Of a DNA stretch of 64,000 nucleotides, positions 11,520 through 24,366 are shown piece after piece. Under the pieces are notes generated by a model. It worked only from the letters and a program-made list of their open reading frames with translations. It ran no database searches and had not been told where the DNA came from. Position 1 is the stretch's first letter. Each line of letters opens with the position of its first letter. Location of the stretch: positions 496,001 through 560,000 of the IMG/VR virus record IMGVR_UViG_3300046660_000488; one strand, given 5' to 3'. Position numbers and translations under genes: made by a program.

Positions 11520-11864
11520 TCAGTGCTCGTAGCCGTCTAGGGCGTACAGCGCCCACTTGGACTGGATCGTGTCGGCGTTCTTCAGGACGAACTCGCGGGC
11601 TTCCGGTTCCGTCTGGAATTTCTTGGACAGGAAAATCCACGACCACTCCATGGAGTTGCCGGGAGGGGCGACCGTGGCGAACGCGATCATCCAGTGGTCG
11701 CGGGTCGTCGCGTGCGGAGCGCCGATATAGCCGACGAACTTGCCGCCGATCTTGATGTTGGTGTCTGGGTTCGGGCTTCCGACAGCGGCGAGGCCTGTAG
11801 CGCGTTGGCCTTTCTTGAAGGTGAACTTGCCCTTCAGGCCTTCAGGCGTCGCGACATCAGTCAT
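11520..11864 (-). CDS. hypothetical protein
   Basis: GGGAG SD before ATG 11864. Confidence 0.6.
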   Translation of the reverse strand: MTDVATPEGLKGKFTFKKGQRATGLAAVGSPNPDTNIKIGGKFVGYIGAPHATTRDHWMIAFATVAPPGNSMEWSWIFLSKKFQTEPEAREFVLKNADTIQSKWALYALDGYEH

Positions 11865-11962
11865 CGTCCGTCTCCCTCTATCGTGCAGAGGAATTGTTGT
11901 CGCACAGTTTAGCGACGAAGTCAAGCACAGTGCGAAGTAGTGATTCGCACTGTGCTTGGAAT

Positions 11963-12038
11963 TGGCAGGGGTGACAGGACTCGAACCTGCAACATCTGGT
12001 TTTGGAGACCAGCACTCTACCAGTTGAGCTACACCCCT
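11963..12038 (-). tRNA. tRNA-Trp(CCA)
   Basis: Cloverleaf; loop CT CCA AA; CCA end encoded. Confidence 0.95.
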
Positions 12039-12264
12039 ATAGGCTGATGCCCGCCTTGGTCAGGAACCAAAGGATCGCAGCAGCAAAGAAAAAGCCTCGG
12101 GCGATGCGCTCGGCGTACGTAACGGGCCAAGTCGCCATCCACCAGAAGCCGAAACCGGCAAGTACGAGGATCGCAAAGATGAGAGCCATGATAAGTCTCC
12201 ACGTGACAGAATGTCACATAGATACTTAGTCACGGCGATCTATACGCCATTTTATTGCCAGAAT

Positions 12265-12339
12265 TGGCGGGAGAGGACGGGATCGAACCGCCGACGCGCT
12301 GCTTTGGAGACAGCCGCTCTACCACTGAGCTACACTCCC
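12265..12339 (-). tRNA. tRNA-Trp(CCA)
   Basis: Cloverleaf; loop CT CCA AA; CCA end. Confidence 0.93.
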
Positions 12340-12348
12340 ATGCTGGCC

Positions 12349-12630
12349 TCACCGCTGAGCGGCGAAGCTGGCGATATGCTTGCAGTTGGACATGACGTAA
12401 CCGACGTACTTCGGGTCGAAGTGACGGTCCGGATCGCTGAGCAGCGACACGTCTTCACGATCCAGTTGATAGACGCCATATTCGGCGCCGATGGCGTAGC
12501 GCTCGACCGGCCGGAAATTCCGACCGCTGATGCTGCGAATGGTGTCCGCCTTGGTGGCGGCGGTGAACGGCGATGAGGTGTTCTCAATCGCGACGATCTG
12601 GTTTTCAGATAGAACGACCGCAAGGGCCAT
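12349..12630 (-). CDS. hypothetical protein inside tRNA operon
   Basis: AGGAGG SD. Confidence 0.65.
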   Translation of the reverse strand: MALAVVLSENQIVAIENTSSPFTAATKADTIRSISGRNFRPVERYAIGAEYGVYQLDREDVSLLSDPDRHFDPKYVGYVMSNCKHIASFAAQR

Positions 12631-12663
12631 GATGCAACCCTCCTAAAATATTGCGTTGATGAA

Positions 12664-12748
12664 TGGTGAACTGGGTGGGACTCGAACCCACGACGGCTTT
12701 CGCGTCGGCTTAAAAGGCCGCTTCCTTCGCCACTCGGAACACCAGTCC
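12664..12748 (-). tRNA. tRNA-Lys(TTT), atypical long variable arm
   Basis: 85 nt; loop CT TTT AA; 13-nt variable region; class-II-like D arm. Confidence 0.85.
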
Positions 12749-12757
12749 ATTGGCTGT

Positions 12758-12995
12758 TTCAACCAGAGTGCTTGGCCGGGCTTCCCCCATTCGGTCAGCA
12801 TCGTCTTGTGACGATCTCTACATGAAGAAACGCGCTTCCTCGAAGGGTAAGCTCCGCCCAACATGCACCCAAGCGCTCAGAGGCGTCGGGGTCGAAATAA
12901 CCAGCAGAGGCTGGCTGCACTTCCACCCTAATCAAGTTAAGGCTCAGGTGCGGGATAGGCGCCTCTTTGGAATTTTTCCAAGCGCTCTGGTTGAA
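12758..12995. ncRNA. candidate structured ncRNA between tRNA-Lys genes
   Basis: 18-bp terminal helix 12758-12775/12978-12995 enclosing several hairpins. Confidence 0.5.
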
Positions 12996-12997
12996 GA

Positions 12998-13082
12998 TGG
13001 AGGATCAGGTGGGACTCGAACCCACGGTGGCATACGCAGTTGATTAAGAGTCAACCCCCTTCGCCGCTCGGGACACTGATCC
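12998..13082 (-). tRNA. tRNA-Lys(CTT), atypical long variable arm
   Basis: 85 nt; GTTGA CT CTT AA TCAAC; variable TGCGTATGCCACC; U73. Confidence 0.85.
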
Positions 13083-13098
13083 AAACTCGTTTGTGCAT

Positions 13099-13175
13099 TG
13101 GTGAGCCGGGTGGGACTCGAACCCACGACCACCTGATTAAAAGTCAGGTGCTCTAACCATCTGAGCTACCGGCCC
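13099..13175 (-). tRNA. tRNA-Lys(TTT)
   Basis: Canonical cloverleaf, CCA. Confidence 0.95.
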
Positions 13176-13251
13176 TAAGACTGCCCGACAAGGTGCACTA
13201 CGGACAGTCCCACCTACCAGCCGTCGCAACGTCTGGGGTGTTGTAAAGTGT

Positions 13252-13327
13252 TGGTGAACCTCCTCGGACTTGAACCGAGAACCATTCGCTTAAGAGGCGA
13301 GCGCTCTAACCATTGAGCTAGAGGTCC
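13252..13327 (-). tRNA. tRNA-Lys(CTT)
   Basis: Cloverleaf, loop CT CTT AA, CCA. Confidence 0.93.
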
Positions 13328-13387
13328 ACATAATTCTCAAGTAGCATTGCTCTAAATAGAGCGCAACTTTTTCTTGAGGAAATCTTC

Positions 13388-13762
13388 ATGGGTACTTCGT
13401 TTACCGGCATCAAGACACTATCTGGCATCAAGGTCGCCGATCCGGCGCCCACCAATGTTTCTCCTGTCTTTACCGACCCGACCTACGACCCGGCTGGTGG
13501 TGGGGCCGCTGGTACGCTGGTCGCGGAATTCCTCGAAAACTCGTCGGTGAATTTCCAACTCCATGCGACGAACGCCCAGAGCTTCAGCATCATGGGCAAC
13601 GCCGGAGCGCTTCCCGGTGGCGTGTCGATGTCGTCGGCTGGCCTGTTCACCGGAACGGCTCCCAACGTGACCCAGACCACCAGCTACACCTTCATGGTGC
13701 GTGCGTCTAACGGCGGCCTGAACACCGACAAGCTGATCACCATCGACGTCATCAACGTCTAA
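13388..13762 (+). CDS. putative Ig-like domain virion protein, antisense inside tRNA operon
   Basis: GALPGGVSMSSAGLFTGT..YTFMVRASNG pattern; TAAATA 13353; GAGGA SD. Confidence 0.7.
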   Translation: MGTSFTGIKTLSGIKVADPAPTNVSPVFTDPTYDPAGGGAAGTLVAEFLENSSVNFQLHATNAQSFSIMGNAGALPGGVSMSSAGLFTGTAPNVTQTTSYTFMVRASNGGLNTDKLITIDVINV

Positions 13763-13764
13763 AC

Positions 13765-13840
13765 TGGTTGGCCCTCTCGGGATCGAACCGAGGACGAGTC
13801 TGTTATGAGCAGACGGCTACTACCACTGAGCTAAGGGCCA
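13765..13840 (-). tRNA. tRNA-Ile2(CAT, lysidine type) or Met
   Basis: TGGCCCTTAGCTCAGTGG start resembles ileX-type tRNA; loop CT CAT AA. Confidence 0.75.
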
Positions 13841-13848
13841 GAAGAATT

Positions 13849-13926
13849 TGGTGGGCACGGCGGGGATCGAACCCGCAGCGGTACGCTTTTTAAGAACGCT
13901 GTGTCTACCAATTTCACCACGTGCCC
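13849..13926 (-). tRNA. tRNA-Leu(TAA), short variable region
   Basis: Leu-type D arm; loop CT TAA AA; 78 nt. Confidence 0.85.
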
Positions 13927-13939
13927 GTGGATTTTTGTT

Positions 13940-14026
13940 TGGTGCCCCCGGCCGGACTCGAACCGGCACGTCCTCACGGACACTGGAATTTGAAGCCAGC
14001 GCGTCTACCAATTCCGCCACGAGGGC
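13940..14026 (-). tRNA. tRNA-Leu(CAA)
   Basis: Class II cloverleaf, CCA. Confidence 0.95.
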
Positions 14027-14056
14027 AAGCAAACCGATGAACGGTTGCTTGTAGTT

Positions 14057-14142
14057 TGGTGTGGATGACAGGACTCGAACCTGCACGCCTTGCGGCCACC
14101 GTTGCTGAGACGGCGATGTCTACCAATTTCAGTCACATCCAC
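14057..14142 (-). tRNA. tRNA-Leu(CAG), C37 variant
   Basis: GCCGT CT CAG CA ACGGT; long variable arm; CCA. Confidence 0.88.
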
Positions 14143-14150
14143 GTAGTGCG

Positions 14151-14352
14151 TTTTGAAGAGCGCGGGCATGTATTCCCGACACCGGACTCGAACCGGTACA
14201 AGTGATCTCACCTACATGCTGGGCGGATGGGGTGCTCCCCATCTATCCGGTTTGGCCCCCTCCCGTCAAAGTAGGAGGGGGTTTCACCAGAAGCGTCTAC
14301 CAGTTCCACCAGTCCGGCCGGGTCTTTCTCCCGGCAACTGCTCTCTTCAAAA
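14151..14352 (-). ncRNA. tRNA-Leu-derived expanded RNA without CCA
   Basis: Leu D arm TGGTGGAACTGGTAGACGC and T arm ACCGG TTCGAGT CCGGT retained; anticodon loop replaced by extra hairpins; 10-bp closing helix. Confidence 0.65.
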
Positions 14353-14354
14353 TT

Positions 14355-14432
14355 TGGTGCGCTTGCCCGGACTCGAACCGGGAACACTCTCCGACCTGAA
14401 CGGAGCGACTTTACCAATTTGCCCACAAGCGC
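14355..14432 (-). tRNA. tRNA-Leu(CAG), short variable region
   Basis: CTCCG TT CAG GT CGGAG; 78 nt; CCA. Confidence 0.88.
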
Positions 14433-14447
14433 GTAAACTGTATTTGA

Positions 14448-14534
14448 TGGTATGGATGACAGGAATCGAACCTGCACGTTTCAAGAACACCGGAACCTAA
14501 ATCCAGCGCGTCTACCTAGTTCCGCCACATCCAC
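14448..14534 (-). tRNA. tRNA-Leu(TAG)
   Basis: Class II cloverleaf; loop TT TAG GT. Confidence 0.95.
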
Positions 14535-14610
14535 ACAATAAAACACAGTCGTCTACTTTACAAAACTCGCAAAACGTGCATGATGCCCACAATCCAATTG
14601 GAGTGCGATC

Positions 14611-14904
14611 ATGCTTTCGACTTTTCTGGCTGGCCTCGCTGTCTATTTCAAGATCGGCGCGGTCATTGCCATCATCAGCTTCGTCTGGTTCAAGGCGGAG
14701 CCCTTCTTCAAGAAGCAAGCCTCCTTCAAGCACGGCTATTTCGATCTGCCGATCTCGATAGCCTTCCTTTTCGCATGGCCGATCATGCTGATCGCCTTGG
14801 CGTATCACTCCATTCTGGAAGTGATCGAGCGCGTGCGGCGCTACCGCCAGAAGCGTCGTAAATTGGTGGGGAAGGTGGGGCTCGAACCCACACGTCATTT
14901 CTGA
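14611..14904 (+). CDS. small membrane protein, antisense in tRNA operon
   Basis: GGAG SD; two hydrophobic segments; 3' end overlaps tRNA-Leu on the opposite strand. Confidence 0.6.
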   Translation: MLSTFLAGLAVYFKIGAVIAIISFVWFKAEPFFKKQASFKHGYFDLPISIAFLFAWPIMLIALAYHSILEVIERVRRYRQKRRKLVGKVGLEPTRHF

Positions 14905-14952
14905 CCACCGATACTCAGTCGGCGCTGTCTACCATATTCCAATCACATCCCC
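14864..14952 (-). tRNA. tRNA-Leu(GAG), U37 variant
   Basis: GCCGA CT GAG TA TCGGT; long variable arm; CCA. Confidence 0.85.
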
Positions 14953-14960
14953 ATTCAATC

Positions 14961-15047
14961 TGGTGCCCAGAACAGGACTCGAACCTGCACGACCTTTCGG
15001 CCACAGCGACCTCAACGCTGCGCGTCTACCAATTCCGCCATCTGGGC
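14961..15047 (-). tRNA. tRNA-Leu(GAG)
   Basis: Canonical class II; loop TT GAG GT. Confidence 0.95.
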
Positions 15048-15061
15048 AATCTCGTAATTCA

Positions 15062-15136
15062 TGGCGTTGATGGAGGGGTTCGAACCCACGGCCTCTTCCT
15101 TCGGAGGGAAGCGCTCTTCCACTGAGCTACATCAAC
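15062..15136 (-). tRNA. tRNA-Arg(CCG)
   Basis: CTTCC CT CCG AA GGAAG; CCA. Confidence 0.93.
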
Positions 15137-15151
15137 ATTCCATGTGTTTAG

Positions 15152-15223
15152 CAGGGACGGAGGGATTCGAACCCCCGACCCCTTGATTCGTAGTCAAGTG
15201 CTCTTCCGCTGAGCTACGCCCCT
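15152..15223 (-). tRNA. tRNA-Arg(ACG), CCA not encoded
   Basis: CTTGA CT ACG AA TCAAG; followed by CTA; flanks complementary. Confidence 0.92.
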
Positions 15224-15253
15224 GCAAAACACATGTTTGGAACCGGGTGTGCT

Positions 15254-15330
15254 TGGCATGGATAACAGGACTCGAACCTGTAACCTTCAGCTTCGCAAGC
15301 TGGTGCTCTCTCCAATTGAGCTATACCCAT
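15254..15330 (-). tRNA. tRNA-Arg(GCG)
   Basis: CCAGC TT GCG AA GCTGA; CCA; flanks complementary. Confidence 0.88.
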
Positions 15331-15443
15331 GCAAAGCACACCCGTTTCCTACTGCCCGGCGGTGGCGCCGCCGGGCAAGGATAAATCTCCCCTCGACGGG
15401 GAGACGGACGATAACGATGTCAAAGACCAAAAGAGTTAGAGTT

Positions 15444-15486
15444 GAAAAAGAAAAACCCCGGAAGGCGTGAGCCTGTCCGGGGTTTT
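15444..15486 (-). terminator. attenuator terminator of the Arg/Leu/Lys/Trp tRNA operon
   Basis: Minus AAAACCCCGGA-CAGGCTCACGCCT-TCCGGGGTTTTT-CTTTTTC. Confidence 0.85.
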
Positions 15487-15524
15487 GCGAGATCGCTACC
15501 AATGAGCGGGTCTGGTTGTGGAGT

Positions 15525-15629
15525 TTATCCCCCAACCAAACCGTCACGGCGAGCGCGCAGCCCCGAAACGTCCGACCACTTAAGCAGTCGGAGCGTTTTC
15601 AATCGGAGGGTGGCGAGGCGCCGGGTCAT
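15525..15629 (-). CDS. leader peptide, 34 aa, MTRRLATLRLKTLRLLKWSDVSGLRARRDGLVGG
   Basis: AAGGA SD; between promoter and terminator; 13 of codons 2-18 are R/L/K/W; distal codons form the antiterminator. Confidence 0.8.
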   Translation of the reverse strand: MTRRLATLRLKTLRLLKWSDVSGLRARRDGLVGG

Positions 15630-15687
15630 TGGAATTCTCTAATCCTTGGATGGGGCACGCCACAGCGGCGCGCTCCGTTCTTAAACC

Positions 15688-15718
15688 TATTTATGCAGGA
15701 ACCCGTTCCCAGCGTCAA
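15688..15718 (-). promoter_or_regulatory. promoter of minus tRNA operon
   Basis: TTGACG-N17-CATAAATA. Confidence 0.75.
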
Positions 15719-15805
15719 CAATAAAAGTCGGTGACCAAAATCATTCTTATTTCGTCAATGATTTCAGACACTTGTTGTGGTTGTGGCGCCAGAATGTCGC
15801 GGAGT

Positions 15806-16081
15806 TTATTGAACGTCGTCGATTTCTTTGGTGACCAACCAGCCCTCGTGGGTCGGCTCGCACAGTTGCCACTCAGCTTTGAAGAGGCCAACCGCCCCGG
15901 CGCCACCCAAGGGCCGCACTTCGACCCAGTGTCGCAGCAGGCCTTTTTCCTTCAGCGCTTTCTCAGTCCGCGTGCCGCCCCACCCGGCCGCCGGGAACCC
16001 ATGGCGCTTGGCCGGGTCCAAGCAGATGTCGGCGATCTCGATCAGGCGTCGGGCTTGGGCTGCGGTGAGCTTGGTGGTCAC
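15806..16081 (-). CDS. hypothetical protein
   Basis: Coupled to upstream ORF; GGAAG SD. Confidence 0.55.
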   Translation of the reverse strand: MTTKLTAAQARRLIEIADICLDPAKRHGFPAAGWGGTRTEKALKEKGLLRHWVEVRPLGGAGAVGLFKAEWQLCEPTHEGWLVTKEIDDVQ

Positions 16082-16923
16082 GATGCGAAATCTTCCTTGG
16101 TGTAGGGTTGGATCAGCGGTTCGAGTTCAGCACGGGCCGCCGCGAGCTTGACCTGCCCTTCCTCGCTCTTCACCCAGCTTTCAGTGTCGAAGAACGTGGT
16201 CATCGCATAGAGGTGCGGCGGCGTCGGGGCTTCATCCGTGCCAGCGACCTTGGCTTCGGCCGCTTCGCGTTTCTCGGCCATGCGCGCGGCGAAGTACTCG
16301 TCGGCGACTTTCTTCCATGCCGCTTTCTTCAGCCGTTCCTCGACGCTGGGCATGACGGCCAAAAGCTCTTCCGCGCCCGGCCAGAACGTGGCGGTGAAAT
16401 TGAACTCAGCCGTGAAACCAAGGTGGACCGGCGCGATATAGCGCCTTTCCAAGATGGCGGACCAGACGCGCTGGCGTTCTTCCCACTCTTCGCGTGGGAC
16501 ATTTTCATCCGGGTCGGTGCTGTCCCAGAAACCGTACGCCTCGATCCACGGTTGCTCGGCGACCATTTCCCGCAGGAAAGGCTGCTCGGCGAACACGAGA
16601 CCGTAGACCTTGCCCTCGAACGGCAGGATGCTGATCGACAGGTCGAAATCGTACTGCGACCGCATGCCGTCCTCGGAACGCTTCTTCCCCTTCTGGAAGC
16701 GGTCGAACGCCGTCCAGTATAGAGAGTCGATCTTGTCGCCCTCTTTCGGTGGGTTGATATAGCGCCGGTTGTCGTGATCGGCAGACATTTCGTCAGCCAT
16801 CTTCTTGGTCATCGCGGCCTTGACCGCAGCCTCGACCTCTTCCCGAAACTCCATGATCAGGTTGTGGATGTCGATCAGGTGCGACGTCGTGAAACGAATG
16901 CCGTGGCCGAGATTCATTGACAT
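16078..16923 (-). CDS. hypothetical protein
   Basis: AAGGA SD before ATG 16923; codon bias. Confidence 0.7.
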   Translation of the reverse strand: MSMNLGHGIRFTTSHLIDIHNLIMEFREEVEAAVKAAMTKKMADEMSADHDNRRYINPPKEGDKIDSLYWTAFDRFQKGKKRSEDGMRSQYDFDLSISILPFEGKVYGLVFAEQPFLREMVAEQPWIEAYGFWDSTDPDENVPREEWEERQRVWSAILERRYIAPVHLGFTAEFNFTATFWPGAEELLAVMPSVEERLKKAAWKKVADEYFAARMAEKREAAEAKVAGTDEAPTPPHLYAMTTFFDTESWVKSEEGQVKLAAARAELEPLIQPYTKEDFAS

Positions 16924-17036
16924 GGAGAGGGCGATCCTTGGAGAGCAAATAGGATACTGAGGCCGCCCCAATCTGGTCAACCAATTTCGGTCGGACCCCC
17001 GAATAAATACTGGGACAATCCCAGTTCGGTGGTTCC

Positions 17037-17975
17037 ATGCCTGATATTATCAAAGCCCGTCTAACGGACGGCCAGTCCCCGGTTTATTTCGTCAACGGCA
17101 CGGTCGTGGCGAACACGCCTGCCAAGGTGGACAATATCCCGACCGTCGTGGGTCCGCCCGGCCCGCAGGGCGTCAGCGTGCGATCCGCAGCCCTCGACGG
17201 CAACACGCTGTCGTTCACGCTGACCGACAACTCCATCATCACGGCCGGGACGGTCCCGAGCGGCCCGCAGGGTCCGCAAGGTGACACGGGTCCGGTTGGC
17301 CCGCAAGGCGCTCAGGGCGCGCAGGGCATCCAAGGCCTGAAGGGCGACCGTGGCGACATCGGTCCGACTGGTCCGACCGGCGCTCAAGGTCCGCAGGGTC
17401 CGCAGGGTCCGCAAGGCGCTCAAGGTCCGGCTGGTCCCACGGGCGCGAAGGGTGACACTGGAAACACCGGCCCGGCTGGTCCGACCGGCGCGCAAGGCGT
17501 CCAAGGTCCGTCTGGTGCTCAAGGCCTCCCCGGAAACGTCGGAGCCCAAGGCCCGGCTGGTCCTACCGGTGCGTCTGGTCCGAAGGGCGACACCGGCCTG
17601 ACTGGTCCACAGGGTTCGACTGGTCCTGCCGGACCTCCGGGGCCGACCTATGAGAACGTTGTGGCCCAAGTTGTGTCGGGATCGGTCAACTGCGACATCA
17701 GCGGCAACAATCTCTACAACTATCTGTTGGCTGGAAACGTCGTCCTGAATTTCACCGGCGTCGCTAACAACACCCGCACGTACAACACTGTTCTCGCGAT
17801 CAAGCAGGGCACGGCGGGTAACTATACCGTCACGTGGCCCGCCAACTGCCTGACCCCGAACAACCAGAACATCACCATGACCCCGACCGCGAACGCCGTC
17901 GATGTCTACACCATCTTCACCTACGACGGCGGCATTAACTTCCTGCTGACGCCGGTGGCCACGGACTACCGTTAA
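17037..17975 (+). CDS. collagen-like (Gly-X-Y) fibre protein
   Basis: Long uninterrupted GXY run; tail-fibre-like C-terminal domain; TAAATA 17004. Confidence 0.85.
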
Positions 17976-17976
17976 T

Positions 17977-19137: not shown

Positions 19138-19142
19138 TTCAA

Positions 19143-19186
19143 GAATTTTGGTGAACGAAATAATTTCACCAAAATTCGCTTTTCTT
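19143..19186 (+). terminator. terminator insulating the tRNA operon promoter
   Basis: GAATTTTGGTGAA/TTCACCAAAATTC 13-bp stem plus T-rich tail. Confidence 0.65.
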
Positions 19187-19187
19187 G

Positions 19188-19218
19188 TTGACCGGAAAAT
19201 TCGTTTCCGGCATAAATA
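19188..19218 (+). promoter_or_regulatory. promoter of plus tRNA operon
   Basis: TTGACC-N17-CATAAATA; palindromic spacer CCGGAAA/TTTCCGG. Confidence 0.75.
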
Positions 19219-19297
19219 GAAATATCAGGGGTGCACAACGCACCTCGGAAACCAATTCGCCCCTCGGGGCTTTCACCATCTAGGAGACTGAATTTCA

Positions 19298-19438
19298 ATG
19301 TTCGCCGTGGCCACCCACATCCCAGCAAATTTCGTCGTCGGCGCCTTCGCCGTCGCGATGCCTGCTGTCGTGGCCCCGATGAATCAAATTCAGCCCACCG
19401 TCGCCGCCCAGTTTGGGCACGGAGGTTTGCACTCGTGA
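19298..19438 (+). CDS. leader peptide, 46 aa, MFAVATHIPANFVVGAFAVAMPAVVAPMNQIQPTVAAQFGHGGLHS
   Basis: AGGAG SD 19282-19286; 37 of first 39 codons are I/V/Q/M/P/N/A/F/T; last codons form the antiterminator. Confidence 0.85.
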   Translation: MFAVATHIPANFVVGAFAVAMPAVVAPMNQIQPTVAAQFGHGGLHS

Positions 19439-19476
19439 TCAGAAGCTGAGAAATCAGCATCCAATCAGAGCGAAGC

Positions 19477-19510
19477 AAGCCTCCAAGGGAAACCTCGGAG
19501 GCTTTTTCTT
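19477..19510 (+). terminator. attenuator terminator of plus tRNA operon
   Basis: AAGCCTCC-AAGGGAAACCTC-GGAGGCTTTTTCTT. Confidence 0.85.
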
Positions 19511-19551
19511 TGGCCTCTCTTCAACCTCCAACCGTCCCTCGATTGTTTCGT

Positions 19552-19626
19552 GGTTCATTAGCTCAGCGGTAGAGCAATCGCTTGATAAGCGATAGGTCGC
19601 TGGTTCGAATCCAGCATGAACTACCA
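19552..19626 (+). tRNA. tRNA-Ile(GAT)
   Basis: ATCGC TT GAT AA GCGAT; CCA. Confidence 0.94.
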
Positions 19627-19657
19627 AACAGTCGAGAGACAACCCCGAGTACTTTGT

Positions 19658-19731
19658 TCTTCTATAGCTCAGCCCGGTAGAGCAATCGCTTGATAAGCGA
19701 TAGGCCGTAGGTTCAAATCCTACTGGAAGAA
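19658..19731 (+). tRNA. tRNA-Ile(GAT), CCA not encoded
   Basis: Cloverleaf; followed by CAA; complementary flanks. Confidence 0.9.
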
Positions 19732-19749
19732 CAAAGTACTTGGGTCCAC

Positions 19750-19824
19750 GGGCCTGTAGTTCAACGGGAGAACGTCTGCATTACAAGCAGAATGTCGGGG
19801 GTTCAACTCCCTCCGGGCCTACCA
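19750..19824 (+). tRNA. tRNA-Val(TAC)
   Basis: TCTGC AT TAC AA GCAGA; CCA. Confidence 0.9.
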
Positions 19825-20029
19825 AAATACTGCTTGACAACGGTTCAACCGAACTTTAGGCAAGCAACCGCGCTCTTCGGGAAGCTCTCTTTGCTTACCG
19901 GACGGATTCCAAAACCTACCATAGGTGCGGAGTCGTGTAAAGGGGCCGGGGTCTTTGACATCGTTGATTTGCGTAACGAATTGGTCGGGCTTTACCAGAG
20001 CCCGGCCGACTTCGGGGACGTGTGTTTGA

Positions 20030-20101
20030 TGAGGGATAGTTCAGCGGTAGAACGCCTGTCTCTGGAACAGGATGTCGTAGGTTCGATCCCTACTCCCTCA
20101 T
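20030..20101 (+). tRNA. tRNA-Gln(CTG), CCA not encoded
   Basis: CCTGT CT CTG GA ACAGG; 16-bp complementary flanks. Confidence 0.9.
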
Positions 20102-20122
20102 CAAACACACGTCCCCATAGGT

Positions 20123-20198
20123 TCGGGGGTAGTTCAGTTGGTAGAACGGCAGTTTTTGGTACTGCATGTCGAAGGTTCGAGTCCTTCTCCCCGATCCA
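20123..20198 (+). tRNA. tRNA-Gln(TTG)
   Basis: GCAGT TT TTG GT ACTGC; CCA. Confidence 0.93.
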
Positions 20199-20220
20199 AA
20201 CACTCAGTATTCATCCTTGT

Positions 20221-20306
20221 TGGGGAATGGTGTAATGGTAACATCCCGGCCTTTGACTCCGGAGACCGAGAAGGATTTGTAGGTTCGAGCCCTACTTCCC
20301 CAGCCA
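20221..20306 (+). tRNA. tRNA-Gln(TTG), long variable arm
   Basis: 86 nt; loop CT TTG AC; variable AGACCGAGAAGGATTT. Confidence 0.85.
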
Positions 20307-20335
20307 GCATGAATATTGAAGACAATGTACTTTGA

Positions 20336-20412
20336 CGCGGAGTGGAGCAGTCAGGTAGCTCGTTTGGCTCATAACCAAAAGGTCGCGGGATCGAAGCCCG
20401 CCTCCGCATCCA
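20336..20412 (+). tRNA. initiator-like tRNA-Met(CAT), variant
   Basis: C1xA72 mismatch; anticodon stem TTTGG/CCAAA; T loop ATCGAAG. Confidence 0.85.
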
Positions 20413-20422
20413 AGTACATTGA

Positions 20423-20620
20423 GGCCGCGTAACAAGAGAGTGAAGCAGTGATGCCCCGTCATCTGTACCTGACGGGGAGGCCAGAAACAGACCGTGCATA
20501 CGCCCCACGGTCTCTAAATATGGAACACGGACCCACTGGGGCCGTGCGGGAGCCAGCACGACCCGCCGTGGTCTAAGTCCGTAAGGGGCAGAAAGCGGCA
20601 CACCCGGTACTGGCGGGTAA
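20423..20620 (+). ncRNA. candidate structured ncRNA
   Basis: Nested helices GCCGC/GCGGC, CCCCGTCA/TGACGGGG, AGACCGTG/CACGGTCT, CGTGC/GCACG; no credible ORF. Confidence 0.45.
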
Positions 20621-20651
20621 CCTATTTGGTCGAATGACCATCACCTTTTTT

Positions 20652-20729
<78 letters not shown>

Positions 20730-20747
20730 ATTGTCCATGTGCTTCGT

Positions 20748-20824
20748 CTAGGCGTAGCGCAGTCTGGTAGCGCGCCTGCTTTGGGAGCAGGATGTCGCAG
20801 GTTCGAATCCTGCCGCCTAGACCA
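20748..20824 (+). tRNA. tRNA-Pro(TGG)
   Basis: CCTGC TT TGG GA GCAGG; C1:G72, A73. Confidence 0.95.
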
Positions 20825-20844
20825 AGCACATGGACTTTCACCTA

Positions 20845-20930
20845 CGGCAGTCGGTGAGGATGTAACAGGTTCGATCCCTGACCACAGGCTCTTGCGAGCG
20901 TGTGAGTAAGCCCATCCAAACCGACTACTG
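20845..20930 (+). ncRNA. T-loop-containing, permuted-tRNA-like RNA
   Basis: Closing helices AGTCGGT/ACCGACT and GGATG/CATCC; T arm CAGG TTCGATC CCTG followed by a closed acceptor-like hairpin. Confidence 0.5.
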
Positions 20931-20931
20931 A

Positions 20932-21019
20932 TCCTCACGACCCAGCTTGGTGACGGGCGCCGACTGTTAATCGGATGACATGGAAATGTGGCAAGGTTCG
21001 AAACCTTGGTGAGGAACCA
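20932..21019 (+). tRNA. tRNA-Asn(GTT), long variable arm
   Basis: 88 nt; loop CT GTT AA; variable stem ACAT-GGAA-ATGT. Confidence 0.85.
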
Positions 21020-21027
21020 TTTCGCAG

Positions 21028-21058
21028 TTGACTTGCATTTAAGTGCTTGTCATAAATA
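21028..21058 (+). promoter_or_regulatory. internal promoter of the same class as the operon promoters
   Basis: TTGACT-N17-CATAAATA. Confidence 0.65.
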
Positions 21059-21089
21059 AGGAACACGAAGGTGCTTCGGCACACTTTGT

Positions 21090-21165
21090 TCTCTCGTAGC
21101 TCAGTTGGTAGAGCGTCTGACTGTTAATCAGAATGTCGTAGGTTCGAGTCCTACCGGGGGAGCCA
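21090..21165 (+). tRNA. tRNA-Asn(GTT)
   Basis: Canonical cloverleaf, CCA. Confidence 0.95.
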
Positions 21166-21303
21166 TTTCTACTACGGTGAGCAAGTAACCGCCTAACGTC
21201 CTTTGGACGAAGGTGCTCCAGCACAAGACGCTGGGCTGACAAAGCACTTGCACAATTCTCTTATCCTGCTTTTCGGTGTTTCGCCAATTTTCGGGATAAC
21301 GAT

Positions 21304-21379
<76 letters not shown>

Positions 21380-21443
21380 ATTTTCTAATCTCGCGCAGGG
21401 CGCCGTGATGAACGGATAAGTCCGCTGCACGCCTTTCTTGGAT

Positions 21444-21549
21444 GGGCTGGACGCCTCCTGACATCGACGTCAGGGTAGAGGTACGGAACCTCGGGCTACG
21501 GCGACAGGGTTCGCGACCCTACGCGGTTCGATCCCGCGCCGGTCCACCA
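21444..21549 (+). ncRNA. 106-nt tRNA-Ala-like RNA without canonical anticodon arm
   Basis: Acceptor GGGCTGG/CCGGTCC with G3:U70, A73, CCA; T arm CGCGG TTCGATC CCGCG; expanded D and anticodon regions. Confidence 0.7.
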
Positions 21550-21558
21550 AGCAGTTTT

Positions 21559-21634
21559 GGGGCATTAGCTCATCTGGTAGAGCGCGACAATCGCAATGTC
21601 GAGGTGAGCGGTTCAAGTCCGCTATGCTCCACCA
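21559..21634 (+). tRNA. tRNA-Ala(CGC)
   Basis: G3:U70; CGACA AT CGC AA TGTCG. Confidence 0.94.
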
Positions 21635-21635
21635 A

Positions 21636-21938
21636 TCACCGGCCGTTCAGGAATTTCTCCGAGCAGATGTAATCGCAGACGGAGAACACCACGGCTTCCG
21701 CACCAGACTCGAAGGCGTCGCTGCTGTGATCGCCGGACCACTGGGGCTTCGCGAAACTGCACGACACGCCGTCCTCGTGGACGCCGACGTCGATGATGTG
21801 GCCTTCGCCTTCGAACTTGGTCAGCGTCTCTTTCGCCCACACCACCGCTTCATAGAGGTCTTCGGTGATCTCGGATGGGACATTCGCATACATGGCGAAA
21901 ATCTGGTCCTTGAGCGCTTGGGGATAGTGGGCGGTCAT
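21636..21938 (-). CDS. hypothetical protein, antisense in tRNA operon
   Basis: Clean ORF filling the inter-tRNA gap. Confidence 0.6.
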   Translation of the reverse strand: MTAHYPQALKDQIFAMYANVPSEITEDLYEAVVWAKETLTKFEGEGHIIDVGVHEDGVSCSFAKPQWSGDHSSDAFESGAEAVVFSVCDYICSEKFLNGR

Positions 21939-22001
21939 GACGATCTCGGGTTTGGTTTACCAAATCCTACACACAACACCCGGCGGGTTCAACCCCGCTA
22001 C

Positions 22002-22077
22002 GGGGCATTAGCTCATCTGGTAGAGCGCCTGTTTTGCAAGCAGGAGGTGTGGGGTTCGAGTCCCCAATGCTCCACCA
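22002..22077 (+). tRNA. tRNA-Ala(TGC)
   Basis: G3:U70; loop TT TGC AA. Confidence 0.95.
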
Positions 22078-22083
22078 AACAAT

Positions 22084-22158
22084 GCGTCTGTAGCTCAGTG
22101 GGAGAGCGCTTCCGTGACATGGAAGAGGCCGACAGTTCAATCCTGTCCAGATGCACCA
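22084..22158 (+). tRNA. tRNA-Val(GAC)
   Basis: CTTCC GT GAC AT GGAAG; CCA. Confidence 0.94.
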
Positions 22159-22232
22159 TTTCACTACCCAACCCCGGAGGATAACCAAATGACCCCGCTA
22201 AACGCAGGAAAGTAAGCAAGAAATTCCGAAAG

Positions 22233-22511
22233 ATGATCGACGTGTACGGGATATTCACCCGAGACATTGAAGAGCATCTTGACTTCAGTGACGACATGCT
22301 CTTGGAAATGTACCAAGCAGAGTCAGTCGGTGGAGACTGTCATCATCGGAATGGCTTCTACCATGGAAAGAAATTCATGGATGTGAGCGTCAAGATGTGG
22401 CGCGAGGACATGTCGAAAGGCACGTTGTTCCTCTGCGAACTCTACGACGATCCTCTCCTGCCCAACTGGTGGTTGGACAAAATCTTCGGTCGGTCTGGTC
22501 CTCCAGACTGA
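22233..22511 (+). CDS. hypothetical protein in tRNA operon
   Basis: ORF filling inter-tRNA gap; true start may lie slightly upstream. Confidence 0.5.
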   Translation: MIDVYGIFTRDIEEHLDFSDDMLLEMYQAESVGGDCHHRNGFYHGKKFMDVSVKMWREDMSKGTLFLCELYDDPLLPNWWLDKIFGRSGPPD

Positions 22512-22518
22512 CCAACAT

Positions 22519-22595
22519 GTAGCCGTAGCTCAGTCTGGTAGAGCGCCTGCCTGAAAAGCAGGGCGTCGGTGGTTCAAATCCACCCGGTTGCACCA
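22519..22595 (+). tRNA. tRNA-Phe(GAA)
   Basis: CCTGC CT GAA AA GCAGG; CCA. Confidence 0.92.
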
Positions 22596-22596
22596 T

Positions 22597-23145
22597 TTAC
22601 TCCTTCTGGAGTTTCTTTTCTCGCCAGAGGCGGCTGTTGGGGCCATCGCCATTCCACCCGTCAAACAGCCCTTCATCCTGTGCGGCTCGCATCATCGGAG
22701 CAACACGAATCCACGCTTGGTACGGCATAGTTCCTCGGGTGTGGTTGCATCGAACACACGAGGTGTTGACGTTGTTCTGCAAGTGGCCAAGGCTATTGTC
22801 GATCCGGTCCAGCGTAATGCGGACCTCTGGTGGTTCAACACCGCAATAAAAGCACGGCTTGGCCACGCATTCGGCCACGAATTCGAGCGTGAGGTCGCAG
22901 TCGCGGTTCTTTCGCTTGTCGGTATAGCGGCAGTCTTGCAGCACGTTGCGGGCTACGGTCATGTGATCGTTCTCTCTCCGAGCTTTGCGACGAACCGCAT
23001 GGCGACGCTCTTCGGCTTGTTGGAACCCTTCCGGGTTGCTGATGAACTGTTCGCGGCGGCAGGGGCCGCATTTCTTTCGGCGCCGACCGGCGCTCATGTG
23101 GAACGCGCTCTCGGGGCGATCCTCTCCGCAATATTTGCACAACAT
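22597..23145 (-). CDS. HNH (His-Me finger) endonuclease, free-standing homing-type
   Basis: CFYCG...LDRIDNSLGH..NNV..CVRCN; N-terminal CxxC...CxxC. Confidence 0.85.
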   Translation of the reverse strand: MLCKYCGEDRPESAFHMSAGRRRKKCGPCRREQFISNPEGFQQAEERRHAVRRKARRENDHMTVARNVLQDCRYTDKRKNRDCDLTLEFVAECVAKPCFYCGVEPPEVRITLDRIDNSLGHLQNNVNTSCVRCNHTRGTMPYQAWIRVAPMMRAAQDEGLFDGWNGDGPNSRLWREKKLQKE

Positions 23146-23199
23146 AGTGCCATTAAGGCACATCTGGTTTTCCAAATTCAATATTTGGTTAACCACTTT

Positions 23200-23276
23200 C
23201 AGGGCGTAGCGCAGCATGGTAGCGCACTTGGTCGGGAACCAAGGGGTCGCAGGTTCAAATCCTGCCGTTCTGACCA
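23200..23276 (+). tRNA. tRNA-Pro(GGG), atypical loop (C33, A37)
   Basis: CTTGG TC GGG AA CCAAG; C1:G72, A73. Confidence 0.82.
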
Positions 23277-23295
23277 TTTCGCCTACGGGCATTAT

Positions 23296-23372
23296 CTATG
23301 TGTAGCTCAGTCTGGTAGAGCGCTGCTTTCGGGAAGCAGAGGCCGCAGGTTCAAATCCTGCCACGTAGACCA
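23296..23372 (+). tRNA. tRNA-Pro(CGG)
   Basis: CTGCT TT CGG GA AGCAG. Confidence 0.94.
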
Positions 23373-23395
23373 AAACACCGGCCACGAGCCATCAT

Positions 23396-23472
23396 CTGAG
23401 TGTAACGCAGTCTGGTAGCGTGCCTGTTTCGGTAACAGGAGGTCGCGGGTTCAAATCCTGCCACTCAGACCA
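23396..23472 (+). tRNA. tRNA-Pro(CGG), U37 variant
   Basis: CCTGT TT CGG TA ACAGG; C1:G72, A73. Confidence 0.85.
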
Positions 23473-23591
23473 ATTTCCTCGAACGAGGATACGACTTTGG
23501 GAAGCTGACCGTTCCAGTGAGTTCGGCAGGGATGACCACCCGGCAGCTAGGCCTCGTCAGCCCGGCATGTCAGGCTAACCCAATTGACCAC

Positions 23592-23668
23592 GGTGCTGTA
23601 GCTCAGTCTGGTAGAGCAGCGGGCTCATAACTCGCTTGTCGCAGGTTCAAATCCTGCCAGCACCACCA
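23592..23668 (+). tRNA. tRNA-Met(CAT) elongator (Ile2 not excluded)
   Basis: GCGGG CT CAT AA CTCGC; CCA. Confidence 0.85.
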
Positions 23669-23674
23669 ACCTTC

Positions 23675-23749
23675 GGGTGATTAGCTCAGTGGTAGAGCGC
23701 TGCTTTCACACGGCAGAGGTCACTGGTTCAAGCCCAGTATCACCCACCA
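23675..23749 (+). tRNA. tRNA-Val(CAC)
   Basis: CTGCT TT CAC AC GGCAG; CCA. Confidence 0.93.
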
Positions 23750-23777
23750 AGAAAAAGGGGCCGAAGCCCCCTGATCC

Positions 23778-24020
23778 TTACTCTTCGACGTACTGGATTT
23801 CTCGCCAAAAATCTCCGGTCGGCGTCACGGTAAAACCACCGGTGTTGGAGACGATCCTGACGTAATGTTCTGCCAGTTCGAGCACGGCCGTTTCGAGATA
23901 GCGGCCGTCGTCTTCGGTGGTGGACGTCAGAACGACCGTGCCGGTCGTGTTGAGCGGATCGAGCGCACCGGCGCGAACGGTGTCGAGCAACGCTTCGAAG
24001 TATACGTCGTAAGTAGCCAT
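23778..24020 (-). CDS. hypothetical protein, antisense in tRNA operon
   Basis: AAGGA SD; own terminator GGGGCTTCGGCCCCTTTTT at about 23752-23771. Confidence 0.65.
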   Translation of the reverse strand: MATYDVYFEALLDTVRAGALDPLNTTGTVVLTSTTEDDGRYLETAVLELAEHYVRIVSNTGGFTVTPTGDFWREIQYVEE

Positions 24021-24095
24021 GAAATGTGTCCTTGAAATGGGTTTAGTATCCAGCCACAAGGATAGCACTGGCCGCTTATTATAAGCAAAATATAC

Positions 24096-24171
24096 GCCGC
24101 CTTAGCTCAGTTGGTAGAGCGCGTCCTTGGTAAGGACGAGGCCACGGGTTCAAGTCCCGTAGGTGGCTCCA
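24096..24171 (+). tRNA. tRNA-Thr(GGT)
   Basis: CGTCC TT GGT AA GGACG; CCA. Confidence 0.95.
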
Positions 24172-24185
24172 TTTTCCCTCCTGAT

Positions 24186-24260
24186 GCCGGGGTAGCTCAG
24201 GGGTAGAGCAGCGGGCTGAAAATCCGCGTGTCGGAGGTTCGAATCCTCTCCCCGGCACCA
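24186..24260 (+). tRNA. tRNA-Phe(GAA)
   Basis: GCGGG CT GAA AA TCCGC; CCA. Confidence 0.95.
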
Positions 24261-24261
24261 T

Positions 24262-24336
24262 GGTCGCGTAGCTCAGCGGGAGAGCGTCCCCTTGACGTGG
24301 GGAAGGTCGCAGGTTCAATCCCTGCCGCGACTACCA
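24262..24336 (+). tRNA. tRNA-Val(GAC)
   Basis: TCCCC TT GAC GT GGGGA; CCA. Confidence 0.93.
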
Positions 24337-24366
24337 TTTTTCTCAACCAGAAAGGAACCGACTCCC

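What the first reader, a model, noticed from the sequence alone, without database searches (positions are those of the whole stretch)
15444..15718. Minus-operon attenuator: R/L/K/W leader whose order mirrors tRNA gene order
Seen: 15629-15525 encodes MTRRLATLRLKTLRLLKW-SDVSGLRARRDGLVGG. Codons 2-18 contain 4 Arg, 6 Leu, 2 Lys (AAA and AAG) and 1 Trp. Arg codons are all CGN, matching tRNA-Arg GCG/ACG/CCG; the operon has no AGR decoder. First appearance R, L, K, W equals the gene order Arg, Leu, Lys, Trp (the Ile2 gene lies between Leu and Lys). Just after the sensing codons, UUCGGGG-C-UGCG (plus 15567-15556) can pair with CGCA-AAA-CCCCGGA (15489-15476), sequestering the terminator's 5' arm. A hairpin GGUUUGGUUG/CAACCAGACC places the stop codon in its loop. 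Three Thr and one Ala in the sensing stretch do not match the operon.
Basis: partly seen in the sequence, partly recalled or inferred. Interest (0 to 1): 0.9.

Follow-up and report, generated by a model that had tools for sequence, protein, structure and literature searches.

The report
Leader-peptide attenuators guarding phage tRNA arrays
A giant phage puts a tiny "test-track" gene and a transcription stop signal in front of each of its two tRNA gene arrays, and each test-track is written almost entirely in the codons read by the tRNAs behind it. This looks like a previously undescribed feedback switch that makes phage tRNAs only when those tRNAs run short.

Summary
At 15718-15444 (minus strand) a sigma-70-like promoter is followed by a 34-codon ORF, a canonical intrinsic terminator, and a 16-gene tRNA array (Arg, Leu, Lys, Trp).

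- **Minus leader:** codons 2-18 are 13/17 Arg/Leu/Lys/Trp. This is the best of 985 six-frame ORFs in the window, and the signal is specific to that reading frame.
- **Plus leader:** the divergent plus-strand array (19552-24336) has the same layout. Its 46-codon leader (19298-19438) has 36/38 codons readable by its own array, touches all 16 anticodons, and contains no Arg, Leu, Lys or Trp.
- **Antiterminators:** the plus one is a 10-bp helix overlapping the last codons, matched by 0 of 1000 shuffles.
- **Order claim:** "leader order mirrors gene order" is coincidence.
- **Relatives:** none exist for this locus. The same design recurs, without detectable sequence homology, in Caulobacter phiCbK-like phages and in one IMG/VR contig, where it is either unannotated or labelled "hypothetical protein".
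- **Literature:** nothing found on this.

Best reading: a ribosome-mediated attenuator that senses tRNA supply. It is a new variant of a known mechanism, and all evidence is in silico.

The parts
15689..15718 (-). Promoter of the minus leader: TTGAC-N19-ATAAAT as searched, read here as -35 TTGACG, 17-nt spacer, -10 CATAAA. The spacer contains an inverted repeat (GGAAC..GTTCC).
   Evidence: 3 exact matches in the window against 0.41 expected; this motif occurs only at these three sites in the 578-kb contig. Alignment A1.
15525..15629 (-). Leader ORF of 34 codons plus stop. The sensing stretch is codons 2-18 (15626-15576). An AAGGA lies 13 nt upstream of the AUG.
15552..15567 (-). Segment 2, the candidate 5' strand of the antiterminator. 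It mimics the terminator's 3' arm and lies just after the sensing codons (codons 21-26).
   Evidence: in the minimum-energy fold of the truncated transcript it pairs with 15497-15476; not above shuffles.
15499..15550 (-). Long hairpin of 22 bp with the stop codon UAA (15527-15525) in its apical loop, lying between segments 2 and 3.
   Evidence: The same feature is present in the phiCbK-type leaders.
15444..15497 (-). Segment 3 plus the intrinsic terminator. The stem is 15486-15452 (AAAACCCCGGA.AGGC / GCCU UCCGGGGUUUU, about -26 kcal/mol), and the U-tract runs to 15444.
11963..15330 (-). Regulated minus tRNA array: Arg(GCG, ACG, CCG), Leu x6, tRNA(CAU), Lys x4, Trp x2.
19188..19217 (+). Promoter of the plus leader, same motif. 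The spacer holds the inverted repeat CCGGAAA..TTTCCGG.
19298..19438 (+). Plus leader ORF of 46 codons. The sensing stretch is codons 2-39 (19301-19414). An AGGAG lies 11 nt upstream of the AUG.
19421..19430 (+). Plus-leader segment 2 (GGAGGUUUGC), overlapping codons 42-45, about two codons before the stop. It pairs with 19475-19484.
   Evidence: -19.5 kcal/mol, reached by 0 of 1000 shuffles.
19475..19511 (+). Plus-leader segment 3 plus the intrinsic terminator. The stem is 19477-19504 and the U-tract runs to 19511.
19552..24336 (+). Regulated plus tRNA array: 24 genes with 16 distinct anticodons, for Ile, Val, Gln, Met, Pro, Asn, Ala, Phe and Thr.
21028..21057 (+). Internal promoter of the same type inside the plus array, just upstream of the second tRNA-Asn. 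It has no leader ORF.

Best explanation
Each of the two divergent tRNA arrays of this roughly 578-kb phage appears to be controlled by a ribosome-mediated transcription attenuator. Its regulatory codons stand in for the tRNAs the array encodes.

Proposed mechanism:
1. Transcription starts at an array-specific sigma-70-like promoter.
2. A ribosome translates a short leader ORF.
3. If the charged tRNAs for the sensing codons are plentiful, the ribosome runs on over segment 2 (minus leader) or sits on it at the stop codon (plus leader). The sensing codons are Arg, Leu, Lys and Trp in the minus leader, and Phe, Ala, Val, Thr, Ile, Pro, Asn, Met and Gln in the plus leader.
4. The terminator hairpin then forms and RNA polymerase stops before the first tRNA gene.
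5. If any of those tRNAs is scarce, the ribosome stalls inside the sensing stretch. Scarcity could come from a poor host supply, host tRNA degradation, or cleavage by an anticodon nuclease.
6. Segment 2 then pairs with the terminator's 5' arm, and polymerase reads through into the array.
7. Newly made phage tRNAs speed up leader translation and shut the array off again. This is negative feedback on tRNA supply.

Shown here: the promoter, ORF and terminator anatomy; the codon matching; the complementarities.
Inferred: translation of the ORF, stalling, kinetic competition between the structures, and read-through.
For: 1. Anatomy: promoter, ORF, terminator, then array, on both strands.
2. Composition, minus leader: 13/17, rank 1 of 985 ORFs, binomial P 1.7e-5.
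3. Composition, plus leader: 36/38, with the next-best ORF at 26-30 of 600, binomial P 2.9e-11.
4. Codon level: 13/17 and 36/38 codons are decodable by the leader's own array, but only 3/17 and 2/38 by the other array. Anticodons touched are 11/12 and 16/16.
5. The signal exists only in the ATG frame.
6. The plus antiterminator is a 10-bp perfect helix at -19.5 kcal/mol, matched by 0 of 1000 shuffles. It is isoenergetic with the terminator state (-115.1 kcal/mol each). It is displaced in silico only when the ribosome A site reaches codon 38 or later.
7. In the minus leader, folded before the terminator's 3' arm exists, the 5' arm is 0.56-0.71 paired with the ribosome at codons 3-18. That falls to 0.27-0.45 at codons 20-35.
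8. Independent analogues exist.
   - phiCbK, CcrRogue, CcrBL10, CcrColossus and CcrPW have leader ORFs matched to their arrays (P from 1e-5 to 1e-6).
   - One of these families has antiterminators of -24 to -27 kcal/mol, reached by 0-1 of 1000 shuffles.
   - That family also carries a hairpin with the stop codon in its loop and one three-way compensatory change.
   - IMG/VR locus L022 has the same layout.
9. The same scan found nothing in DSS3_MAL1 or RAS14, so it is not prone to false positives.
Against: - No orthologue of this locus exists in any collection searched, so the window's own leaders could not be tested for conservation.
- The minus antiterminator is no better than shuffled sequence.
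- At equilibrium the minus terminator is favoured for every ribosome position, so that switch would have to be purely kinetic.
Three of them are read by plus-array tRNAs.
- The spacing between the Shine-Dalgarno-like sequence and the AUG is long (11-13 nt), and this phage rarely shows such sequences at all.
- The design is absent from some other phage tRNA arrays.
- Nothing here is experimental.
Confidence: 0.75

Rival explanations
1. The leader ORFs are translated and do sense tRNA supply, but the output is not the proposed terminator/antiterminator switch. Alternatives include Rho-dependent polarity when translation and transcription uncouple, ribosome-dependent control of transcript stability or processing, or a pause-release mechanism built on the hairpin that holds the stop codon in its loop.
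For: The minus antiterminator is not statistically distinguishable from chance, and the terminator dominates at equilibrium. The hairpin with the stop codon in its loop is shared by the minus leader and the phiCbK-type leaders, and the simple model gives it no role.
Against: Canonical intrinsic terminators follow both ORFs. The plus leader and the phiCbK-type leaders have highly significant antiterminators placed exactly where a ribosome would control them. Rho-type polarity would give the opposite sign, with less tRNA made when tRNA is scarce.
Confidence: 0.1
2. The two small ORFs are ordinary small-protein genes, or the transcripts are small non-coding RNAs, each with its own promoter and terminator. 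On this view the terminators merely insulate the tRNA arrays and the codon match is fortuitous.
For: The leader RNA is unusually structured (z = -6.2). The plus peptide is hydrophobic and could pass for a membrane micropeptide. phiCbK gp083 is annotated as a hypothetical protein.
Against: No promoter-like sequence was seen by eye between either terminator and its first tRNA, so the arrays would depend on read-through. The plus peptide has no Leu in 38 residues, which would be odd for a membrane segment, and Leu tRNAs sit in the other array. Both ORFs rank first for their own array's amino-acid set, and the signal is frame-specific. Composition is conserved in phiCbK-like genera while the sequence drifts. 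No Rfam family matches.
Confidence: 0.1
3. A T-box-like or other direct RNA sensor of tRNA, working without a ribosome.
For: The element sits in front of translation-related genes and has terminator/antiterminator alternatives.
Against: No T-box hit, or any other Rfam hit, at E <= 1 in either leader. The signal is a continuous in-frame run of 17-38 codons from an AUG to a stop, not a single specifier codon.
Confidence: 0.03

Closest known systems
Leader-peptide transcription attenuators of amino-acid biosynthesis operons (trpL, hisL, leuL, thrL, ilvL/ivbL, pheL)
   Same: Both have a short translated leader ORF enriched in regulatory codons. Both have an intrinsic terminator before the structural genes and a segment after the regulatory codons that mimics the terminator's 3' arm and can pair with its 5' arm. 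Sensing of several amino acids has a precedent in thrL (Thr and Ile) and ilvL (Ile, Leu, Val), as I recall from established knowledge.
   Different: The regulated genes here are tRNAs, not enzymes. The leader samples 4 to 9 amino acids and nearly every anticodon of the array. The element is viral. There is no sequence match to any Rfam leader family. In the minus leader the stop codon lies far downstream of segment 2, inside a hairpin loop.
pheST (pheM leader) attenuation of an aminoacyl-tRNA synthetase operon in E. coli
   Same: A leader-peptide attenuator in front of a gene of the translation apparatus, responding to charged tRNA (from memory, not tested here).
   Different: It senses a single amino acid and regulates a synthetase, not tRNA genes, and it is cellular rather than viral.
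T-box riboswitches
   Same: Both sense tRNA status through a terminator/antiterminator choice upstream of translation-related genes.
   Different: T-boxes bind uncharged tRNA directly through one specifier codon and a conserved T-box motif. Neither is present here, and the signal here is a translated ORF.
Leaders of phiCbK-like Caulobacter phage tRNA arrays
   Same: Both run promoter, small ORF matched to the downstream tRNA set, segment 2, terminator, array. One of these families also has a hairpin with the stop codon in its loop, as the window's minus leader does.
   Different: No detectable sequence homology to the window's leaders (nhmmer). The amino-acid sets differ and the host lineage is different or unknown. 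The phiCbK genome paper mentions neither attenuation nor leaders (PMC3556154).

Membership tests
Ribosome-mediated (leader-peptide) transcription attenuator | Short ORF with its own start and stop, lying between the promoter and the first structural gene | tested here: met
   Minus ORF 15629-15525 and plus ORF 19298-19438, each lying between a promoter match and the array.
Ribosome-mediated (leader-peptide) transcription attenuator | Regulatory codons enriched and cognate to what the operon supplies | tested here: met
   13/17 and 36/38 codons are decodable by the leader's own array. Each ORF ranks first in the window and the signal is frame-specific and array-specific.
Ribosome-mediated (leader-peptide) transcription attenuator | Intrinsic terminator between the leader ORF and the structural genes | tested here: met
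   GC-rich hairpins followed by U-tracts at 15486-15444 and 19477-19511. The simple scan missed both of them.
Ribosome-mediated (leader-peptide) transcription attenuator | Antiterminator that excludes the terminator and whose formation depends on ribosome position (plus leader) | tested here: met
   10-bp helix at -19.5 kcal/mol, reached by 0 of 1000 shuffles. It is lost in silico only when the A site reaches codon 38 or later.
Ribosome-mediated (leader-peptide) transcription attenuator | Antiterminator that excludes the terminator and whose formation depends on ribosome position (minus leader, the finding itself) | tested here: inconclusive
   It is present in the truncated-transcript minimum-energy fold and depends on ribosome position there. 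But 187 of 1000 shuffles reach its energy, and the terminator wins at equilibrium.
Ribosome-mediated (leader-peptide) transcription attenuator | Downstream genes are amino-acid biosynthesis or aminoacyl-tRNA synthetase genes | tested here: not met
   The downstream genes are 16 and 24 tRNA genes.
Ribosome-mediated (leader-peptide) transcription attenuator | Read-through rises when the cognate charged tRNA is limiting | not testable with these tools
   This needs reporter, Term-seq or in vitro coupled transcription-translation assays.
Rfam leader families (Trp, His, Leu, Thr and Phe leaders) and T-box | Match to the family covariance model | tested here: not met
   cmscan at E <= 1 over 11000-25000 gave only one chance-level hit in a leader, ctRNA_pGA1 on the minus terminator at E = 0.89. 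Nothing hit the plus leader.
phiCbK-type phage tRNA-array leaders (undescribed, defined here) | Same architecture: ORF matched to the array, segment 2 mimicking the terminator's 3' arm, terminator | tested here: met
   compared.
phiCbK-type phage tRNA-array leaders (undescribed, defined here) | Detectable sequence homology | tested here: not met
   nhmmer with profiles of both Caulobacter-phage leader families gives no hit at either window leader.

The most novel reading that the evidence does not exclude
Large phages of several lineages may carry a previously unrecognised class of tRNA-supply sensors. These lineages are this roughly 578-kb phage, the phiCbK-like Caulobacter phages and at least one other IMG/VR lineage. 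In each, a tRNA array is gated by a leader peptide that is a codon-by-codon proxy for the array's anticodons. The phage would then switch on its own tRNAs only when the host pool fails, including when host defences cleave or deplete specific tRNAs. That would make the arrays inducible counter-defence modules rather than constitutive codon-usage helpers.
Probability: 0.5. Interest if true: 0.92.

Novelty: new variant of a known kind. Interest (0 to 1): 0.85.

Why it matters
How phages regulate their tRNA genes is essentially unknown. Arrays are usually treated as constitutive supplements for codon usage or as decoys against tRNA-cleaving defences.

A leader-peptide attenuator that reads the very codons served by the array would be the first case of attenuation controlling tRNA genes. 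It would also be the broadest known multi-amino-acid leader, covering 9 amino acids and 16 anticodons in the plus leader.

Such an element would give a direct read-out of which tRNAs a phage "expects" to be limiting. The analogous elements in phiCbK infect a standard laboratory host, Caulobacter crescentus, so the idea can be tested at once.

It also suggests a simple rule for annotating small "hypothetical proteins" in front of phage tRNA clusters.

Tried and rejected
- **Rfam** (E <= 1): no known RNA family in either leader.
- **INPHARED blastn** of 15300-19500: only collagen-repeat matches.
- **Neighbouring proteins:** the 300-aa protein finds only its own contig in IMG/VR. The 386-aa protein has no homologue among 5.8 billion proteins.
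- **Promoter-based scans of IMG/VR**: the motif occurs only at the three window sites in the 578-kb contig. The other hits are chance, with no tRNA arrays nearby.
- **PheRS-like neighbour:** it has relatives at 43-53% identity (L010, L012, L023), but none has tRNAs nearby.
- **LR745206:** it is 30% GC and has only 2 tRNAs in its first 295 kb, so I stopped scanning it.
- **Metagenome pattern scan:** no hits.
- **Second internal leader at 14729-14643:** rejected. It has a TTG start and is antisense to a convincing 97-aa membrane ORF.
- **Leader order mirrors gene order:** rejected.
- **Homology between the window's minus-leader tail (..DGLVGG) and the CcrPW tail (..DGMVGG):** rejected. The tail is not conserved even in CcrColossus, and nhmmer finds nothing.
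- **XacN1 Lys/Tyr-rich 13-codon ORF before the Lys, Lys, Tyr tRNAs** (P 2e-6): kept only as a weak lead, because no terminator follows it.
- **Shine-Dalgarno analysis**: uninformative, because few genes of this phage have one.

Full report
**Observation**

The window is part of IMGVR_UViG_3300046660_000488, a 578-kb phage contig of about 58% GC. It carries 40 tRNA genes in two divergent arrays. The minus array runs from 15330 down to 11963: Arg x3, Leu x6, one tRNA(CAU), Lys x4, Trp x2. The plus array runs from 19552 to 24336: 24 genes for Ile, Val, Gln, Met, Pro, Asn, Ala, Phe and Thr.

It is 15629-15525 on the minus strand, 34 codons, with its stop at 15527-15525. Codons 2-18 read T R R L A T L R L K T L R L L K W. 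All seven Arg codons of the ORF are CGN.

Upstream lies a sigma-70-like promoter at 15718-15689. Downstream lies a textbook intrinsic terminator, with its stem at 15486-15452 and a U-tract running to 15444. I saw no promoter-like sequence by eye between the terminator and tRNA-Arg. The 246-nt leader RNA folds far better than shuffled sequence (z = -6.2). No Rfam family matches it.

**The other array is an independent replicate**

The plus array has the same layout:
- the same promoter motif at 19188-19217;
- a 46-codon ORF at 19298-19438, preceded by AGGAG;
- an intrinsic terminator at 19477-19511;
- then the first tRNA, 41 nt further on.

In codons 2-39 every residue except one His and one Gly belongs to the nine amino acids served by the plus array. 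All nine are represented. There is no Arg, Leu, Lys or Trp. So the two leaders divide the amino acids the way the two arrays do.

**Statistics**

| Measure | Minus leader | Plus leader |
|---|---|---|
| Residues matching own array | 13/17 (only ORF of 985 at or above this) | 36/38 (next best 26 in the same position, 30 in any window, of 600) |
| Binomial tail P | 1.7e-5 | 2.9e-11 |
| Codons decodable by own array | 13/17 (null mean 4.0, sd 1.9, next best 10) | 36/38 (null mean 15.1, sd 3.4, next best 25) |
| Codons decodable by the other array | 3/17 | 2/38 |
| Own-array anticodons touched | 11/12 | 16/16 |
| Score in the other five frames | 1-5 | 5-20 |

The plus leader uses all four Ala codons, all four Pro codons and both Gln codons. 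It uses only ACC for Thr, which matches the array's single tRNA-Thr(GGU).

**Alternative structures, plus leader**

GGAGGUUUGC (19421-19430, codons 42-45, about two codons before the stop) forms a perfect 10-bp helix with the terminator's 5' arm at 19475-19484. Its energy is -19.5 kcal/mol, reached by 0 of 1000 dinucleotide shuffles. The antiterminated and terminated folds have the same energy, -115.1 kcal/mol.

When I folded the leader with a ribosome footprint masked at each codon in turn, the antiterminator persisted for A-site codons up to 37. The terminator took over from codon 38 onward. That is what classical attenuation requires.

**Alternative structures, minus leader**

There the 5' arm is 0.56-0.71 paired with the ribosome at codons 3-18, and 0.27-0.45 paired at codons 20-35.

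Two results weaken it:
- Its energy (-16.6 to -21 kcal/mol) is matched by 19-54% of shuffles.
- At equilibrium the -26 kcal/mol terminator wins for every ribosome position.

So the minus switch is plausible but would have to be kinetic. Its antiterminator is not supported statistically on its own.

**Relatives and analogues**

No orthologous locus exists in any collection I searched. Conservation of the window's own leaders therefore cannot be tested.

The window's tRNAs resemble those of Caulobacter phiCbK-like phages most closely, so I wrote a scan for ORFs upstream of tRNA clusters and ran it on those genomes. It found two leader families conserved across three genera.

*First family.* It precedes the Pro/(Thr)/Lys/Leu/(His)/Ala/Ser array. 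It includes phiCbK gp083, CcrBL10 gp078, CcrRogue gp083 and unannotated ORFs in CcrColossus and CcrPW. With the array's amino-acid set as ARAGORN called it, 28-33 of 35-44 residues match (P from 1e-5 to 1e-6). If Ser, Thr and His are also counted, by my own count about 41-42 of 44 residues fall in the set. In phiCbK the ORF is followed by an annotated terminator.

*Second family.* It precedes the (Phe)/Val/Ile/Gln/(Asn)/(Arg) array:
- A mimic of the terminator's 3' arm follows the sensing codons directly.
- It pairs with the terminator's 5' arm at -23.6 to -27.4 kcal/mol, reached by 0-1 of 1000 shuffles.
- The pairing is register-specific: 96% of cells pair, against 24-56% when the partner strand is slid.
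- One alignment position changes in step in the 5' arm, the 3' arm and segment 2.
- The stop codon sits in a hairpin loop between segment 2 and the terminator, as in the window's minus leader.

*A further example.* IMG/VR locus L022 shares an identical 32-nt stretch of tRNA-Ile with the window. It has a promoter-like TTGACA (read by eye), then a 55-codon ORF containing all 20 amino acids (true of 1.2% of null ORFs). The antiterminator overlaps the stop codon (19 of 1000 shuffles). A terminator follows, then an array serving at least 19 amino acids.

*Limits.* The same scan found nothing in DSS3_MAL1 or RAS14, so the design is not universal and the scan is not prone to false positives. Profiles of the Caulobacter-phage leaders do not hit the window's leaders. 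The relationship is one of design, not detectable homology.

**Literature**

Nine full-text searches turned up no description of a leader-peptide attenuator for tRNA genes or phage tRNA arrays. The terms combined phage tRNAs, tRNA operons or arrays, leader peptides and attenuation. The phiCbK genome paper contains neither "attenuat" nor "leader". It states that Rfam detected no functional RNA other than tRNAs (PMC3556154).

**Mechanism and caveats**

The best reading is classical ribosome-mediated attenuation put to a new use, sensing tRNA supply for the codons the array serves. This gives negative feedback: more phage tRNA speeds up leader translation and increases termination. It could also make the arrays inducible when host tRNAs are degraded or cleaved.

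Every dynamic step is inferred. The 11-13 nt spacing between the Shine-Dalgarno-like sequence and the AUG is long. Three Thr codons and one Ala codon in the minus leader fall outside its own array. Three of these four are read by plus-array tRNAs, so 16 of the 17 codons are read by phage tRNAs overall.

The claim that residue order mirrors gene order does not survive. Kendall tau is 1.0 here, but -0.33, -0.60, 0.00 and -0.20 in the other four leaders tested.

**Verdict**

The feature is real and more than chance. This is a new variant of a known regulatory mechanism, apparently undescribed, and it can be tested directly in phiCbK and Caulobacter.

Noticed in passing
window 12664-12748, 12998-13082 (tRNA-Lys); 20932-21019 (tRNA-Asn); 20221-20306 (tRNA-Gln): Several tRNAs that normally have a short variable loop are 85-88 nt long here. 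Lys(UUU) at 12664-12748 and Asn(GUU) at 20932-21019 were drawn with ARAGORN and carry a long base-paired variable arm, a class-II-like shape. The others are inferred from length only. phiCbK-like phages also annotate tRNA-Lys genes of 86-91 nt. This might relate to escape from tRNA-targeting nucleases. I did not pursue it.
   Followed up: partly
window 14867-14952 (-): An extra tRNA-like gene with a long variable arm. It scores 30 bits against the Rfam tRNA model, just above that model's threshold, but ARAGORN did not call it. It lies between Leu(GAG) and Leu(UAG).
   Followed up: no
window 14611-14904 (+): A 97-aa ORF whose sequence looks hydrophobic and membrane-like (by eye, no prediction run). 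It lies antisense inside the minus tRNA array. This explains a spurious Lys/Leu/Met-rich ORF on the minus strand at 14729-14643.
   Followed up: partly
window 15689-15718 (-), 19188-19217 (+), 21028-21057 (+): The promoter motif TTT-N4-GTTGAC-N18-CATAAATA occurs only three times in the whole 578-kb contig, and all three sites are in the tRNA arrays. Each spacer holds an inverted repeat, which could be an operator, and each transcript begins with a 5' hairpin.
   Followed up: partly
window 24228-25463 (+): A gene like the alpha subunit of phenylalanyl-tRNA synthetase (Pfam tRNA-synt_2d, 5e-35). By the ORF listing coordinates its GTG start overlaps the last tRNAs of the plus array, so the true start may lie downstream. 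Relatives at 43-53% identity occur in two other huge-phage genomes and one short metagenome contig, but without adjacent tRNAs.
   Followed up: partly
L015 11745-11974 and 13546-13706; L016 11749-11886 and 13651-13813; L018 8750-8887 and 10654-10817; L014 9608-9727 and 16492-16657; L017 11618-11728 and 18561-18724: phiCbK-like Caulobacter phages carry two conserved families of leader ORF plus terminator in front of their tRNA arrays, with amino-acid composition matched to the array. They are annotated as hypothetical proteins or not annotated at all.
   Followed up: yes
L022 2254-2030 (-), IMGVR_UViG_3300009082_000021: A 55-codon leader containing all 20 amino acids lies in front of a near-complete tRNA array. 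Its antiterminator overlaps the stop codon and is followed by a terminator.
   Followed up: partly
L013 64-105 (Xanthomonas phage XacN1, record 30428-30469): A 13-codon ORF with 3 Lys and 4 Tyr directly precedes a tRNA-Lys, tRNA-Lys, tRNA-Tyr cluster (P 2e-6). No terminator follows it, so the mechanism, if there is one, would differ.
   Followed up: partly
window 15405-15385 and 15378-15354 (-): Two further strong hairpins lie between the minus terminator and the first tRNA-Arg. They could be processing or stability elements.
   Followed up: no
window 17037-17975 (+): A collagen-repeat protein resembling a tail fibre lies between the two arrays. It accounts for all the weak blastn hits to mycobacteriophages.
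   Followed up: no
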